DNA of 64,000 bases from Convolutriloba macropyga (Eukaryota): the NCBI RefSeq assembly GCF_964194025.1, contig NC_134472.1, positions 11,408,001 to 11,472,000 of the forward strand, written 5' to 3'. Positions within the stretch are counted from its first letter, which is position 1. Every line of letters begins with the position of its first letter. Position numbers and translations under genes: made by a program. The notes under the pieces are model-generated. The model had not been told where the DNA came from and did not search any database. It was given only the letters and a program-made list of their open reading frames with translations. Shown here piece after piece: positions 24,641 through 29,789 of the stretch.

Positions 24641-24712
24641 AAACAAATTTGGAGGCGCTCTGACAATGATATATCAACTAAAACATTTGAAGGACATGTT
24701 GGAAATGGAATC

Positions 24713-26456
24713 TGCGAGAGAAATTCATGTACAACCACTAACAATCAAGTTTATTACAACAGCAGTTTCAAGAGTTTGTGAGTTTGAGATTGAATTTGGG
24801 AAGTTGACTCTAAACTGTACAATGTTACACTGGGGTACGAAACCATTTTCAACACCGTGGAGGGTTTTTAATGTTTTTTTCTCCTGATTGCTATTACTTG
24901 TCGTTGGGTACTTCTGGCTAGCCGCGTTTTCAGTTGTTATTGGACGTTGTTAGGCATGAAGGTAAGTTTTGTCACAGAGGGTGAAGAAAGAAAGAGTAGG
25001 TAAATAAAAGAGAAAGAAAAGAAATAAAAGAAATTGAATTAAGCTAGAACTGGAAAAAGGGCTGAGCATCAATCAGCTGTGTCTGTTTACTCGAGACAGC
25101 TGCGGCGCATTGGGGGATCGAACTCCCGCTGTGTTTTCCATATCGTGTACTGATGTGTTGCGCCAATATACACACGTTTGTGTTAGAGAACTGCGTTAAA
25201 GGTAAAATTATCGTTCAATTTTTGTGGCTGATGAATAAGTCTTGAGTTTTGAAATGAATTTGATATGCATAATTGAGATACTCCAAATTCATTGATTCCA
25301 AAGTTTGCCGGTTTCCACTTGTCTCGTATCTTATACAAATGCTTGGTTTTCACGCTTTAGGAGAATATCAAAATGTCCGCACGCATTACTTCCGAGAGTC
25401 CTCCTCCAGAGGAGAAGTTTTCTCTCGGTATAATTCGGGTGATTCCTCTCGAAAGCTTCGGCGATGGAGACAGGGATCCCCGGAAGATTGCCCGAAAGAA
25501 GCTTCCTCTGAGGGTTTGATACCGGATGGATTGTCGGAGGCTTAGAGCTTGGAAGCGTCAGAAGCGTGTTGTAAAGCCTAGGAAACGGCGGGCGACTTCG
25601 GATTCGAAAGGATCGAAGAAGCTTCCTGACCCTAGGTTTGATCCTGACTTTGATCCGAAGGATCCTTTGGGTCTCAGCCGGTGATCTCTGATTTTTAAAT
25701 CAGTAAATCACAAGAACATGTTTGATTTTCAGGTAACCTAACCAATCAGAAGGTCTTATGTGCTTTTACAGTTGTTCTTTGGACATTGCCTTTTCTTTTC
25801 TATAAGGCGTAAAATTGGTTCAATTTTGTTTTTTTTTGCGCGCTTGATGTAGTCTTTTGCCAGTCGTATCTGAATGCTTCTTATAAATGGTGAGTTAGAT
25901 TCTTCATGTAATTTTTTCACACTATACCATCGAAGTTTACTTAAACAAATTCTTAGTGCACTGTTTTGCGCTTTTTGCATAATATAGATAATCGTTTGCG
26001 ATTGGTTGAGCCAGCAAGCGTTCGCATATAGAAATAAAGGCCCGATCCAGGTCTTGTACAGCAGAAGTAAACTTTCCTGCTCAATATTGAAGTTGCTTAG
26101 ACGCCACAGCTGGAAAATTCGCTCGTTTGCTCTGGTTACGACGTTTTTACAATGTTCACTCCAATTTAGGCGTGGCGTCATTGTTATTCCTAGGAACTTG
26201 ATGGTTTTTGCTTCTTCAATTTGTCTTCGGTTGATGTTTAGGCTGAGACTTGTTTGTTTCTTCGAAGGATTTCTGAATAGAATGTATTTTGTTTTGGCGG
26301 GATTTATTTTGCTTTTCAGCCTTTCACACCACTTTATGAGTATGTTGAGTGAAGCTTGGAGTTTGCTTTGTAATAACTGACTGGACTGTGACCTGTAAAA
26401 TAATGCAAAATCATCTGCAAACTGAGAAATTTCTGCTGGAGTTTCTGGAATATGTT
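24713..26456 (-). mobile_element. 5'-truncated LINE (RT C-terminal half plus ~1-kb 3' region) bounded by a 21-bp direct repeat
   Basis: ORF 25756-26493 contains ISQFADD, INPAKT, KFLGITM and LYKTWIGP..LY (RT domain 5 onward). GGACATGTTGGAAATGGAATC occurs at 24692-24712 and 26457-26477. Minus-strand AATAAA at 24750-24755. Confidence 0.8.
24956..25684 (+). pseudogene. Putative spliced antisense ORF (K/R-rich, ~110 codons, one internal TGA) inside the LINE 3' region
   Basis: ATG AAG|GTAAGT (24956-24961) joins in frame to ctttag|GAG (25361). The frame is open to TGA at 25682-25684 except for TGA at 25517-25519. Confidence 0.5.
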
Positions 26457-26477
26457 GGACATGTTGGAAATGGAATC

Positions 26478-26577
26478 CATGACAAACTCCCATTCTTTGT
26501 ATTTTTAGTAAACATCCTTATCAAAACCATGACAAACTCCCATTCTTTGTATTTTTAGTAAACGTCCTTATCAAAAC
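26478..26577. repeat. 50-bp tandem duplication (2 copies, 1 mismatch) next to the LINE 5' junction
   Basis: catgacaaactcccattctttgtatttttagtaaac(a/g)tccttatcaaaac occurs twice in tandem. Confidence 0.95.
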
Positions 26578-26790: not shown

Positions 26791-29004
26791 TCAGTCTGAG
26801 TTCCAGTCAAGGTCATCCCATCCATTGTCCCCTGAGCCCTCCAAAACTTCTGATTTCTGTTCCAATAATGATGACTCGAAGTGAGTATAACTTTCAGGAC
26901 TCGGTTGAATCAATCTCCTTTGACTGATTTGGTTTCCTTCGCTTAAACTCACTCTGTTTTCTTTTACAAACGAACCATTAGAGCAATAATCATTAAGCTC
27001 CGTTGAACTGTTTAATTTAGAAGGTTGATCATTTTCAAACTCAGTTGATGACAGTCTTTCTGGCTGCTGGTCATTTTCGCTGTCATCGCTTAGCGACACC
27101 TTGACTCTGTTGCAAATACCTGCTAACTCGGGATAAATAACAGGCGTTGGCTCATCCATGCCTGATTCTGCATTATCCAGCTCAATCGCAGAATTCTCAG
27201 ACACATTGGCATTGGTTACCGTGGAATAGTTTTGAATAATTTTGAGCTCCAAATCGCTCAGAGTTTCCAAATTGTTAATGGAAATATTATCACTTTCAGA
27301 ATTTGTAACCGCAGCACTTTCTTCAATCGGAGGCGCAGCTGGTATCCGGTTAGAGGTCTTTAAAATTGACTTCGGGATAACTTCCTCGGTTTTTTCCGAG
27401 ATCGGGTCAAGTCTTTCAGCCAATTCTGAAAGTGCTTTTTTCTTAACAGACCTGGAGTTTAATCTCGCATTTTGAATTGCATTTTCAGCTGAATTGTCAT
27501 TGCTCTTTTGATTTGCAGCTGGAATTCTGCTAGGCTGTCTTTCATTGCGATTTTTCGTTTCAGCTTTGACCTTCGACTTTCTGAAGTTTGAAAGAGACAC
27601 TTCAGCTAGCAAGTCAACTTCCGAATCCGTATCATTCGTTTCCTCCTCCGCGAAGTACGAACTATCCACAGTCGGAAGAACATTAGCGGCCTGCGTTCGT
27701 GGTCTGATTTCCACGAACACGACTCGGCGAGAGCCTCCAACAACTCTATTGCTTCCCAAATATGGAACCAAATCACCCAAACAGTGAAAGGTCAGTGAAA
27801 CTATATCATCATTTGTATCTCTCAGCCCTGCTAGTAACTTAGGCAATAGTGTTTTTGAAATCTCCTTTTTAGGAATGTAAGGTAGAATTGGCTTCAGATG
27901 CGACAACAGAAGCAATCTGGTGTCTATACTGCGACTGTAGAGTAACTTCAGGAATTGAGGAACAACATGATCTTTGTACAAATTCTCCGTAAGAAACCCC
28001 CTCGATGATTTTGGGCTTTTGATGGATACTGCCGGATTAAGAATGTCGCCAATAACTCTCTGAGCAGTGGTCTCGTAAACAACCCAGTCCGCAAGTAGCA
28101 AGGGCAAAATCCTAGTTACAACAAGTTTCGAATCCAAAGTTGATATATTTGCTCTCAAACTTTCGAGGAACTCAATTTTTTCGTCGTCATCTTTTGTCAC
28201 AAAGTTATGGAAGAAGTTTACAATAGAACTGTAGTAACTGTTAAATACGGAATGTTTCAAAATTGACGAACATTTAGGTCGCAATTTGTAATCTTGGCTG
28301 AGCATATTTTTTGAAGTAAAATCGACAAAATCTGTCAAAGTAGTATCTAAAGTTAGCTTGTTGTGTCTCGAATAATTATTTGTATTTAGAATTTCGTTTT
28401 TGAACAAATGACCCAGCATATATACATCTCGAGTAAATCCAAAGTTTGTGGGCACTGCGGCCTCGCAGCTGTCTTCAGGCGGTAGTAAATGAGACGGAAT
28501 TTTATTCTGTGCAAAAACCTGCCAGGATGAATTGGTAAACTTTGACATATTTTCTAAACATCCAAGTTTCCATTCTCCGCTATCAGCTACAAAAATTGAT
28601 GACATTAGAACATTGTTATAACTGCACAGGCATATATCGTGGATGAACAAAAGTGCATTAGTGATATTATGCATACCGTGCACTAACTCTTGAGCTGTCA
28701 TATCCTTAATGCACTGCACTAACGGAACGGCGTTCTCAAAAACTATGTGCGTGGTCAACGACGCTTCCAACGAATGAGTTTCCATGTAATAAAGCAGACT
28801 TGGATGCTTTATAGTCCGTGAAAAGTGTTTCAAGTTCTCCATTAAATGCTTATCGCCAGAGAAGATGAGAACTGAGTTCTTTTTCTGGCTTTCGACCGGT
28901 TTGGGTTTGGCTCTCTGGATAACATAGGAATGGCTTTGAGTTGTCTCCACAGGATGGATGCCATCAAAGTTTGCTTTGAGGAGAGAAGAGTCTGACGTTC
29001 CCAT
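26791..29004 (-). CDS. SCYL3: SCY1-like pseudokinase 3 (PACE-1), intronless CDS, 737 aa
   Basis: Likely start MGTSDSSL (MG myristoylation-type N-terminus). Pseudokinase region (IKHPSLLYY, ALLFIHD...YNNV...SIFVADSGEWKLG) and a HEAT segment LLPKLLAGLRDTNDDIVSLTFHCLGDLVPYLG..VVGGSR typical of SCYL3. Disordered tail ends GWDDLDW. Confidence 0.92.
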   Translation of the reverse strand: MGTSDSSLLKANFDGIHPVETTQSHSYVIQRAKPKPVESQKKNSVLIFSGDKHLMENLKHFSRTIKHPSLLYYMETHSLEASLTTHIVFENAVPLVQCIKDMTAQELVHGMHNITNALLFIHDICLCSYNNVLMSSIFVADSGEWKLGCLENMSKFTNSSWQVFAQNKIPSHLLPPEDSCEAAVPTNFGFTRDVYMLGHLFKNEILNTNNYSRHNKLTLDTTLTDFVDFTSKNMLSQDYKLRPKCSSILKHSVFNSYYSSIVNFFHNFVTKDDDEKIEFLESLRANISTLDSKLVVTRILPLLLADWVVYETTAQRVIGDILNPAVSIKSPKSSRGFLTENLYKDHVVPQFLKLLYSRSIDTRLLLLSHLKPILPYIPKKEISKTLLPKLLAGLRDTNDDIVSLTFHCLGDLVPYLGSNRVVGGSRRVVFVEIRPRTQAANVLPTVDSSYFAEEETNDTDSEVDLLAEVSLSNFRKSKVKAETKNRNERQPSRIPAANQKSNDNSAENAIQNARLNSRSVKKKALSELAERLDPISEKTEEVIPKSILKTSNRIPAAPPIEESAAVTNSESDNISINNLETLSDLELKIIQNYSTVTNANVSENSAIELDNAESGMDEPTPVIYPELAGICNRVKVSLSDDSENDQQPERLSSTEFENDQPSKLNSSTELNDYCSNGSFVKENRVSLSEGNQISQRRLIQPSPESYTHFESSLLEQKSEVLEGSGDNGWDDLDWNSD

Positions 29005-29789
29005 TCCAAGGATGTAGGGAATAAGTTTAATCCTTCTGCCTATTATAACAAACTGCACTATTTCGAGTATTGAAAGTCTACATTGCGTCTAAAAACATGG
29101 GAGTTTCATTATCTAGAACAAAAAATTAAGCAGTTATTTTATGATTAGATCATAGAAGAAGCGTGGGTAGTTCGCAGTAATTGTGGATTCAAGGCAGATT
29201 AATATTTGCCCTCATTAAAATGATTCCGGTGAAATATCACATAGTCTGTGTTTTATGTGGTTTTCCGCATTTTTTATGCCACAATCTATGCTACTATTGA
29301 AGCTCGTAACTGCAAAGCCCTCATGCTTTACCTCTTGATATCGATTTTCTTCTAAAAAAGTTAAGTCGGTCAGATTAAATACCGAAAGAAAAAGAACTCC
29401 AGGACTAACATAATCGCTACAAACTTTTGAGAGCAACTGTTAACTTGCGAGTTAAACTGAAACTTTTATGCTTGTAGCTGCTGCTAGGTGAGATCAAAGG
29501 TCTGCCGTTAATGCCAATTAGTATAAAGCGTCATAAAATGGATCGAAACGGTCAAACAAAAGGTTGAACGGGCTTAGACAAAAATTTAAATCAACAGAAC
29601 TAAAACAACGAGAACAAGCTCAGCTGAAATTATTACCATAAGACAACCGGATAAACATTTAACTACAGCACTGAGTCATGGAAAATTTAATCAAGGGTAT
29701 TTACTCACAGACCGATAAGCTTTCGATCAAAACAGTCGCTTCTTTTGCTTAATAGTTATTGGTAAGGAAGTCATCCAAGAGTCGAGTTT

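What the first reader, a model, noticed from the sequence alone, without database searches (positions are those of the whole stretch)
24692..26477. LINE carrying an antisense, intron-containing basic ORF in its 3' region
Seen: a 21-bp direct repeat (24692-24712 and 26457-26477) brackets a 5'-truncated minus-strand RT ORF plus ~1 kb of downstream sequence that ends near a minus-strand AATAAA. On the opposite strand of that 1 kb are an Inr-like TCAGTT (~24930), ATG-AAG followed by a consensus donor GTAAGT (24962), and an acceptor ctttag (25360) that joins in frame. The product is MK|ENIKMSARITSESPPPEEK...RKIARKKLPLRV*YRMDCRRLRAWKRQKRVVKPRKRRATSDSKGSKKLPDPRFDPDFDPKDPLGLSR*, about 110 codons with one internal TGA that could be a CGA>TGA change. 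Its stop lies 71 bp from the RT stop, so the two ORFs converge. Established: an intron antisense to a retroelement transcript is not spliced out during retrotransposition. Inference: this LINE family may encode a third, antisense, spliced nuclear or nucleic-acid-binding accessory protein, or it may have 3'-transduced a host gene. The ORF track misses it.
Basis: partly seen in the sequence, partly recalled or inferred. Interest (0 to 1): 0.8.

Follow-up and report, generated by a model that had tools for sequence, protein, structure and literature searches.

The report
LINE family with conserved antisense gene
The window holds a dead, 5'-truncated LINE copy, but its family carries a conserved small gene for a ~105-residue basic protein on the opposite strand of its 3' region, and a relative of that gene also sits antisense in the LTR of an unrelated retrotransposon in another genome.

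Summary
The anatomy is real. An exact 21-bp target-site duplication brackets a 1,744-bp, 5'-truncated, minus-strand LINE copy at 24713-26456. Its 1,043-bp 3' region is multi-copy and always joined to the RT, so it is not a one-off 3' transduction.

The plus-strand ORF is a family-level gene ("aORF"). It starts at the ATG matching window 25373 and encodes 105-107 aa. It has no stop in at least 36 genomic copies. Its dN/dS is 0.33, equal to the ORF2 control and lower than all 66 control windows/frames. It is kept in two diverged LINE lineages. A ~45-50% identical homologue lies antisense inside the LTR of BEL/Pao elements in a different assembly, where only the ORF is similar.

The window's own copy is broken by a 4-bp and a 2-bp deletion. 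These shift 34 nt and create the TGA, so it is not a CGA>TGA change.

The proposed "MK" first exon and intron are unsupported. That ATG is missing in 11 of 30 copies, including the youngest subfamily, and distant homologues all start at the downstream Met-Ser. No RNA data exist.

The protein is basic, largely disordered and matches no known family. Its function is unknown; a nuclear accessory factor is an inference.

The parts
24692..24712 (.). Left copy of the 21-bp target-site duplication
   Evidence: Exact repeat of 26457-26477, read directly. Homology to other copies starts at 24714-24721.
24713..26456 (-). 5'-truncated LINE copy of 1,744 bp: the last ~230 codons of ORF2 plus the 3' region
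   Evidence: 29 other genomic copies align over 24714/24721-26453 at 78-93% identity. The full-length relative L034 has ORF1 (CCHC) and ORF2 (APE+RT).
25756..26456 (-). C-terminal remnant of ORF2 (RT FADD motif onward), with stop codon at 25756-25758
   Evidence: Pfam RVT_1, E=3e-8, profile positions 148-204 of 205. dN/dS is 0.37 in this frame against 0.87 and 1.08 in the other two.
24713..25755 (-). 1,043-bp conserved 3' region of the LINE. It has no poly(A); the last few bases are short and variable (TC/TTC-like)
   Evidence: At least 40 scored copies out of 252 candidates. Copies are more alike here (0.83-0.90) than in the RT part (0.62-0.80). Ends are shown.
24751..24756 (-). AATAAA on the LINE sense strand, about 40 nt before the 3' end
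   Evidence: Read. The surrounding AAGTTTATTACA block is kept in nearly all copies shown and in the diverged copy L066.
25373..25684 (+). Antisense ORF (aORF), here a pseudogene. Its frame is shifted between 25509 and 25542 by a 4-bp deletion (after 25508) and a 2-bp deletion (after 25542). An in-frame TGA lies at 25517-25519, and the normal stop at 25682-25684.
   Evidence: Intact 104-107-aa versions exist in 10 of 30 aligned copies. At least 36 of the first 46 near-full-length genomic matches have no stop. Deletions are seen.
24956..24967 (+).
   Evidence: The ATG is replaced by ATA, AGG, AAG, ATC or TTG in 11 of 30 copies. The block is missing in L066 and differs in L045.
25355..25360 (+).
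   Evidence: No RNA evidence is available.
25080..25140 (-). Best-conserved block of the 3' region. It has a tRNA-like T-arm motif (GGGAGTTCGATCCCC) closed by a GGCGC/GCGCC stem on the LINE sense strand.
   Evidence: Conservation 0.905; alignment. ARAGORN and Rfam find nothing. Fold z-score is -1.27, not significant.
26457..26477 (.). Right copy of the 21-bp target-site duplication

Best explanation
The window holds a dead-on-arrival, 5'-truncated copy of an APE-type LINE (ORF1 with a CCHC knuckle, ORF2 with APE+RT, no poly(A) tail). The copy is flanked by a 21-bp target-site duplication.

The family's conserved 1-kb 3' region carries a real third gene on the strand opposite ORF1/ORF2. This gene is an unspliced coding sequence of 105-107 codons. 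It starts at the Met-Ser matching window 25373 and stops 71 bp from the ORF2 stop, so the two genes converge.

The product is a small, basic protein (pI about 10). It is mostly disordered, with one predicted helix and an NLS-like KPRKRR stretch. Conserved motifs are IPLES-G, KLP-FE, YR-WK and a DPDFDP--PLGL tail.

Shown here: the ORF is conserved under purifying selection in the LINE's active lineages, and a homologue lies antisense in the U3 part of BEL/Pao LTRs in another genome.

Inferred: it is transcribed from an antisense promoter within the last ~650 bp of the element. Every 5'-truncated LINE copy and every LTR would then carry an expressible copy. The protein would act in trans in the nucleus as an accessory or regulatory factor of the element.

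The window's own aORF is inactivated by two small deletions.
For: - TSD and truncation.
- The segment is multi-copy and always linked to the RT.
- Full-length architecture.
- Intact aORFs: 10 of 30 aligned copies; at least 36 of the first 46 near-full-length tblastn matches have no stop, and three copies are 100% identical.
- Selection: dN/dS between subfamilies is 0.33 in the aORF frame. All 66 control windows/frames of the non-ORF 3' region lie between 0.38 and 1.47 (median 0.75). The ORF2 positive control gives 0.37.
- Between subfamilies the aORF diverges by 0.117, against 0.213 for the upstream 'intron' stretch and 0.265 for the 71-bp spacer. Subfamily-specific indels are in frame, for example +6 bp.
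- The same convergent layout is kept where ORF2 is only 51% identical (L066, aORF 63%) or 31-45% identical (L045, aORF 43%).
- Profile searches find homologues 39-53% identical to the window-family aORF: P0066 and P0070-P0082.
- These lie at sense positions 65-349 (antisense) of the 1.21-kb LTRs of BEL/Pao elements that have TG..CA ends, a PBS, a PPT and a 5-bp TSD. Both LTRs carry the ORF. dN/dS there is 0.33-0.39.
- Nucleotide similarity between the LINE 3' region and the Pao LTR is confined to the ORF.
- All three homologue groups start with Met-Ser.
Against: - There is no expression evidence of any kind. No RNA run is on record for this organism, and the four runs laid behave like genomic DNA.
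- The protein has no Pfam, PDB or Atlas relative, and its fold prediction is weak (pLDDT 66, pTM 0.22). The proposed function is therefore inference only.
- The dN/dS contrast rests on non-independent pairs, and the closest control reached 0.38.
- Two sister LINE families (ORF2 55-56% identical) and a LINE from another run (43%) show no aORF. The gene is therefore dispensable for this LINE clade as a whole.
- The whole 3' region, not only the ORF, is unusually conserved. Some of that constraint could act at the RNA level.
Confidence: 0.72

Rival explanations
1. One reading: the aORF is a spliced gene. Its first exon supplies Met-Lys (24956-24961), and an intron at 24962-25360 is retained through retrotransposition because it is antisense to the LINE RNA.
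For: GTAAGT and an AG are present in the window and in most copies (26/30 and 29/30). The join is in frame in the window. The principle that an antisense intron survives retrotransposition is sound established knowledge.
Against: The exon-1 ATG is absent in 11 of 30 copies, including all five of the youngest subfamily (ATA), whose aORFs are intact. The block is missing in L066 and altered in L045. Distant homologues in Pao LTRs and in P0066 begin at the same Met-Ser as window 25373. Splice-site conservation does not exceed background. The Inr-like TCAGTT is private to this copy. A non-coding 5'-UTR intron remains possible.
Confidence: 0.12
2. The open frame is a by-product. The 3' region is conserved as RNA or DNA (RT recognition, promoter, structure), and the ORF stays open by chance and composition. 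No protein is made.
For: The whole 3' region is more conserved than ORF2 among copies. The terminal 230 bp, which is non-coding on either model, is as conserved as the ORF (0.117). The protein is predicted mostly disordered and has no known relatives. There are no expression data.
Against: Third-position-biased change gives dN/dS of 0.33, below all 66 controls and equal to ORF2. Indels between subfamilies are in frame. A homologue exists in an unrelated backbone (BEL/Pao LTR), where only the translated frame is similar and dN/dS is again 0.33-0.39.
Confidence: 0.1
3. The ORF is a fragment of a host gene captured once by 3' transduction or template switching. It is carried along passively, and the Pao-LTR copies are an independent capture of the same host gene.
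For: Retroelements do capture host sequences (reviewed in PMC7264820). The same ORF in two retroelement classes could reflect a common cellular source.
Against: An exhaustive profile search of 1.84 billion representative proteins gave only 13 hits. The four whose context was looked up were all retroelement-linked, and none carried a host-gene name or Pfam domain. In the window's genome every one of the 30 aligned copies, and both divergent copies examined, was linked to this LINE. Purifying selection persists within the elements. A host origin in the distant past is not excluded and is compatible with the best explanation.
Confidence: 0.06

Closest known systems
Antisense additional ORFs between pol and the 3' LTR of plant LTR retrotransposons (maize Grande gene23, rice RIRE2, Silene Retand)
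   Same: A small ORF antisense to gag-pol at the 3' end, present in most copies of a family, with no database homologues. Some products are nuclear, and function is unknown (PMC7264820).
   Different: Those are plant Ty3/gypsy elements, and the ORF lies in the internal region. Here the host element is an animal APE-type LINE, and in the second genome the ORF lies inside the LTR of a BEL/Pao element. There is no sequence similarity.
Human/primate L1 ORF0, and the antisense ORFs overlapping L1 ORF1 in some mammals
   Same: A third ORF on the antisense strand of a LINE, short (ORF0 is 71 aa), with no known domain (PMC5203782; PMC4700185).
   Different: ORF0 lies in the 5' UTR and is driven by the 5' antisense promoter. 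It is lost from 5'-truncated copies and is primate-specific. The aORF here lies in the 3' region, so truncated copies keep it, and it is shared with an LTR element.
Retroviral antisense proteins (HTLV-1 HBZ, HIV-1 ASP)
   Same: Encoded on the minus strand near the 3' end and transcribed from the 3' LTR. HBZ is a basic nuclear regulator. This rests on my own knowledge; the parallel is also drawn in PMC7264820.
   Different: There is no sequence or domain relationship. HBZ is a bZIP protein. Those proteins are encoded in the internal region, not inside U3.
Accessory ORF3 types shared between LTR, Penelope-like and non-LTR elements in bdelloid rotifers
   Same: The same accessory ORF type is found in retroelements of different classes, indicating modular gene sharing (PMC5408684).
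   Different: Those ORFs are enzymes or env-like proteins (GDSL esterase, DEDDy exonuclease). The abstract read here does not state their strand; that they are sense-strand is my own recollection. Here the ORF is a small disordered basic protein, always antisense.
Drosophila TART telomeric LINE (antisense, spliced transcripts; host-gene fragment in the 3' region)
   Same: A LINE with strong antisense transcription, introns in the antisense RNA, and captured sequence near the 3' end. This rests on my own knowledge and was not checked in a paper here.
   Different: No conserved antisense protein-coding gene of this kind is described for TART. There is no sequence similarity.

Membership tests
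APE-type non-LTR retrotransposon (LINE) | ORF2 with an apurinic-like endonuclease followed by reverse transcriptase | tested here: met
   The full-length relative L034 hits Exo_endo_phos_2 (4e-16), Exo_endo_phos (4e-10) and RVT_1 (4e-37). The window remnant hits RVT_1 (3e-8).
APE-type non-LTR retrotransposon (LINE) | Target-site duplication and variable 5' truncation with a common 3' end | tested here: met
   A 21-bp exact TSD. Copies share the 3' end at 24714-24721 and stop at different 5' points.
APE-type non-LTR retrotransposon (LINE) | Assignment to a named clade (CR1, L2, Jockey, I ...) by RT phylogeny | not tested
   Only architecture was seen: an ORF1 CCHC knuckle, no RNase H, no poly(A). 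No reference RT set was available. The nearest named hits are uninformative 'hypothetical protein' entries.
Retroelement antisense accessory ORF (aORF at the 3' end) | ORF antisense to pol/ORF2, placed between its stop and the element's 3' terminus | tested here: met
   In the LINE it lies 71 bp from the ORF2 stop. In the Pao element it lies 133 bp from, or overlaps, the pol stop, inside the LTR.
Retroelement antisense accessory ORF (aORF at the 3' end) | Present in most copies and lineages, not in one or a few transduced copies | tested here: met
   About 150 genomic matches. All 30 aligned copies carry it. The diverged lineages L066 and L045 carry it.
Retroelement antisense accessory ORF (aORF at the 3' end) | Purifying selection on the encoded protein | tested here: met
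   dN/dS is 0.33 (LINE) and 0.33-0.39 (Pao). This is below all 66 controls and equal to the ORF2 control.
Retroelement antisense accessory ORF (aORF at the 3' end) | Antisense transcript and protein actually made | not testable with these tools
   No RNA run is on record for this organism. The runs laid are DNA-like contigs.
L1 ORF0 | Antisense ORF within the 5' UTR, upstream of ORF1 | tested here: not met
   The aORF lies in the 3' region downstream of ORF2.
Spliced gene with intron 24962-25360 | Start codon of exon 1 conserved among functional copies | tested here: not met
   19 of 30 copies keep the ATG. All five copies of the youngest subfamily read ATA. The block is missing or altered in L066 and L045.
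Spliced gene with intron 24962-25360 | Spliced plus-strand reads across 24961^25361 | not testable with these tools
   No RNA runs. No such joint appears among the joints listed from the DNA-like contigs.
3' transduction of a host gene by this copy | Segment single-copy, or unlinked to this RT elsewhere | tested here: not met
   At least 40 scored copies, all contiguous with the RT.

The most novel reading that the evidence does not exclude
The aORF is a mobile accessory-gene cassette that has moved between retroelement classes (an APE-type LINE and BEL/Pao LTR elements) in different animals. In each it has settled in the same place and orientation: antisense, and convergent with the polymerase gene, in the segment that truncated LINE copies and solo LTRs retain. 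Hundreds of otherwise dead copies could then supply in trans a small nuclear protein that promotes the family, for example by countering silencing or aiding nuclear steps.
Probability: 0.3. Interest if true: 0.8.

Novelty: new variant of a known kind. Interest (0 to 1): 0.62.

Why it matters
Antisense accessory genes are known for retroviruses, some plant LTR elements and primate L1 (ORF0), but their roles are poorly understood. In the papers found here, none is described in the 3' region of a LINE.

This one is under measurable purifying selection. It survives 5' truncation, so most dead copies still carry it. It also recurs, at the protein level only, inside the LTR of an unrelated retroelement class in another genome. 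That makes it a tractable case for two questions: what such proteins do, and whether retroelements exchange accessory genes.

For annotation, it shows that standard ORF tracks and Pfam miss a gene present in well over a hundred copies in this genome.

Tried and rejected
- **RNA evidence.** Two run searches (window copy and young-subfamily copy) returned only runs of one study, none on record as RNA. Laying X1-X4 gave DNA-like coverage: about 60-75x in unique flanks and thousands in the repeat. No 24961^25361 joint was listed. This is uninformative about splicing.
- **tRNA/SINE idea for the conserved block at 25080-25140.** ARAGORN found nothing and Rfam nothing at E<=1. The fold z-score is -1.27. 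It is left as an unexplained motif.
- **Protein family.** Pfam found nothing beyond noise. PDB profile hits were only E>=0.08. The ESM Atlas gave no usable hit. The AlphaFold2 model is too weak (pTM 0.22) to justify a fold search, so none was run.
- **The LINE 3' region as a captured Pao LTR.** Rejected, because nucleotide similarity is limited to the ORF.
- **P0049 as a divergent homologue.** Rejected; it is a copy with a doubly frameshifted stretch.
- **aORF as a universal feature of this LINE clade.** Rejected. Sister families L068 and L069, and L067 from another run, lack it.
- **Earlier findings.** Nothing is on record near this place or for these words.
Full report
**1. What is in the window**

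An exact 21-bp direct repeat (GGACATGTTGGAAATGGAATC) lies at 24692-24712 and 26457-26477. Between the repeats is a 1,744-bp element.

- The minus-strand ORF at 25756-26493 matches only the last quarter of Pfam RVT_1 (profile 148-204 of 205, E=3e-8). It contains the FADD motif.
- Homology to other genomic copies begins at 24714-24721 in every copy, directly after the left repeat. It runs to about 26453, directly before the right repeat.
- This is therefore a 5'-truncated LINE insertion in minus orientation with a 21-bp target-site duplication.
- The sense-strand 3' end has no poly(A). The conserved ...GTACATGAATTTC is followed by a few variable TC/TTC-like bases.
- An AATAAA lies about 40 nt upstream of the end (24751-24756 on the minus strand).

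**2. The 1-kb "downstream" segment belongs to the LINE**

- A search of the window's own 1.18-Gb genome with 24713-25755 gave 252 candidates. All 40 scored copies were 79-93% identical over essentially the whole length.
- In all 29 fetched copies the segment continues into the RT without a break. A one-off 3' transduction is excluded.
- One full-length relative (L034) shows the architecture. ORF1 is 398 aa with a CCHC knuckle. ORF2 is 899 aa with APE and RT domains and no RNase H. The ~1-kb 3' region follows.
- I did not assign a named LINE clade.
- Among copies, the 3' region is more alike (0.83-0.90 per-site identity) than the ORF2 C-terminal part (0.62-0.80).

**3. The plus-strand ORF is real at the family level, but the window copy is broken**

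- I translated every aligned copy from the position matching window 25361. A frame of 104-107 codons starts at the ATG matching 25373 and ends at the stop matching 25682-25684. It is intact in 10 of 30 copies, including the most divergent subfamily.
- A translated search of the genome gave about 150 matches. At least 36 of the first 46 near-full-length matches have no stop, and three are 100% identical to L034's.
- The window copy differs from the others by a 4-bp deletion after 25508 and a 2-bp deletion after 25542. The same two "put in" events appear when sequencing contigs of other copies are laid on the window (table 4).
- The two deletions sum to 6 bp. The frame is therefore restored after a 34-nt shifted stretch, and that stretch contains the TGA at 25517-25519.

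**4. Evidence that the frame is protein-coding**

- Between the two main subfamilies (10 by 5 natural copies, Nei-Gojobori), dS is 0.27 and dN 0.09, giving a ratio of 0.33 in the aORF frame.
- All 66 control combinations (309-nt windows in six frames across the non-ORF part of the 3' region) lie between 0.38 and 1.47, with a median of 0.75.
- The ORF2 remnant gives 0.37 in its true frame and 0.87 and 1.08 in the other two.
- Region by region, inter-subfamily divergence is 0.117 in the aORF.
- Subfamily-specific length differences are in frame, for example +6 bp.
- Two older LINE lineages of the same genome keep the same convergent layout. In L066, ORF2 is 51% and the aORF 63% identical. In L045, ORF2 is 31-45% and the aORF 43% identical.
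- The ENA assembly ERZ25071359 is the same genome: L045 matches G000 C1:84829852 at 100%.

**5. A homologue in an unrelated retroelement**

- An exhaustive profile search of 1.84 billion representative proteins returned only 13 hits. Two are clearly divergent: P0066 (a Logan contig of run SRR31017040) and P0070 (ENA assembly ERZ25074608).
- A second search seeded with these found a set of ~94-aa proteins in ERZ25074608 (P0071-P0082). In the alignment to the window-family aORF they are 39-53% identical. They share the start Met-Ser and the motifs IPLES-G, DPR, KLP-FE, YR-WK, KPRKR and DPDFDP--PLGL.
- Their context is not a LINE. In L046 and L047 they lie inside 1.21-kb direct repeats spaced 6.1 kb apart.
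- These repeats flank BEL/Pao gag-pol genes (DUF1759, Pao_retrotransp, Integrase_H2C2, DUF5641). They begin TGT and end ACA, and are followed by a TGG... primer-binding site and preceded by a purine-rich tract. In L046 the element is flanked by a 5-bp duplication, GGGAT.
- The ORF occupies LTR sense positions 65-349 on the antisense strand. It is therefore again convergent with the polymerase gene, 133 bp from the pol stop in L047 and overlapping it by 20 nt in L044. It is present in both LTRs.
- dN/dS between Pao-type variants is 0.33-0.39.
- Nucleotide similarity between the LINE 3' region and the Pao LTR is limited to the ORF, at 60-65%.
- The window's genome has no Pao-type copy. Its best matches to P0071 are the LINE-type copies at 47-50%.
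- P0066 sits on a 3.2-kb contig and overlaps a convergent 638-aa ORF. Its DNA could not be read.
- Two sister LINE families of the window's genome (ORF2 55-56% identical) and a LINE from another run (43%) show no aORF in their 3' regions. The gene therefore belongs to particular lineages, not to the whole clade.

**6. The proposed first exon and intron**

- The ATG at 24956 is kept in 19 of 30 copies. It reads ATA in all five copies of the youngest subfamily, whose aORFs are intact. Other copies read AGG, AAG, ATC or TTG.
- In the diverged copy L066 the whole TCAGTT-ATG-GTAAGT block is absent, and in L045 it differs.
- GT is kept in 26 of 30 and AG in 29 of 30, no better than the background.
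- The Inr-like TCAGTT is private to the window copy; the others read GCAGTT (table 3).
- All homologue groups start at the same Met-Ser. The coding sequence therefore most likely starts at 25373 and needs no splice.
- A non-coding 5'-UTR intron cannot be excluded or shown. No RNA run is on record for this organism, and the runs found behave like genomic DNA.

**7. What the protein may be**

- It is basic. The LINE type has pI 10.1, with 24 K+R in 107 residues. The Pao type has pI 8.8. Both are proline-rich and hydrophilic.
- AlphaFold2 with the family alignment gives a short hairpin (residues 13-22) and one helix (53-69), with the rest unstructured (pLDDT 66, pTM 0.22).
- Pfam, PDB and the ESM Atlas give nothing.
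- A nuclear, motif-mediated adaptor role is inference from composition and from analogy with other retroelement antisense proteins. It has not been shown.

**8. Comparison with what is known**

- The nearest precedents are the antisense additional ORFs between pol and the 3' LTR of plant LTR retrotransposons. These are present in most copies, have no homologues, and some are nuclear (PMC7264820).
- Others are primate L1 ORF0 and the mammalian antisense ORFs over L1 ORF1 (PMC5203782; PMC4700185), and retroviral HBZ/ASP (my own knowledge).
- Accessory ORFs are also shared among retroelement classes in bdelloid rotifers (PMC5408684).
- This case differs in four respects: the host element (an animal APE-type LINE), the position (the 3' region, retained by truncated copies), the location inside U3 in the Pao version, and the protein family.
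- The literature searches run here found no description of a conserved antisense gene in a LINE 3' region. This covers only the open-access library.

**9. Verdict**

- The window copy is an ordinary dead LINE fragment. Through it, however, a family-level antisense gene with a cross-class homologue comes to light.
- Expression and function remain untested.

Noticed in passing
window 26478-26577: Directly after the right target-site duplication, a 50-bp unit (ccatgacaaactcccattctttg...atcaaaa) occurs twice in tandem with one mismatch.
   Followed up: no
window 26006-26380 (+); L034:1257-1763 (+): A second open frame lies antisense to the ORF2 C-terminal coding region. It is 124 aa in the window and 157-168 aa (stop to stop) at the matching position in five of the twelve extended copies (L031, L032, L034, L038, L042). 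It may be a by-product of ORF2 codon usage; selection was not tested.
   Followed up: no
window 25080-25140 (-): The most conserved block of the LINE 3' region contains a tRNA-like T-arm/B-box motif (GGGAGTTCGATCCCC) closed by a GGCGC/GCGCC stem, next to a CAGCTGTCT/AGACAGCTG hairpin. ARAGORN and Rfam are negative, and the fold is not better than shuffles.
   Followed up: partly
G000 C6:3380049-3399715 (own genome, outside the window): At least ten aORF-like fragments (43-62% identity) lie within 20 kb, many about 0.7-1 kb apart. This looks like a tandem array derived from the LINE 3' region. It could not be fetched.
   Followed up: no
L045 / G000 C1:84827830-84833015: An old, diverged LINE lineage is present at one locus with local duplications. 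It carries four aORF-like pieces in about 3 kb.
   Followed up: partly
window 26791-29058 (-): An uninterrupted 755-aa ORF lies next to the insertion. It has only a weak HEAT-repeat hit and is presumably a host gene. The LINE inserted about 300 bp from its end.
   Followed up: no
L046:14750-15082 (other assembly): A Pfam Monjiviricetes_fusion hit lies downstream of a Ty3/gypsy-like RT-RNaseH-integrase on the same strand. This suggests an env-like gene of negative-strand RNA virus type in a neighbouring LTR element.
   Followed up: no
L068, L069 (same genome): Two abundant sister LINE families (ORF2 55-56% identical; protein clusters of 121 and 61 member sequences) have long 3' regions of about 1.9 kb. 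These are conserved between the two families but unrelated to the aORF module, apart from one 36-nt match (86% identical), which lies about 160-200 nt from the 3' end of the aORF-family 3' region (L034).
   Followed up: partly
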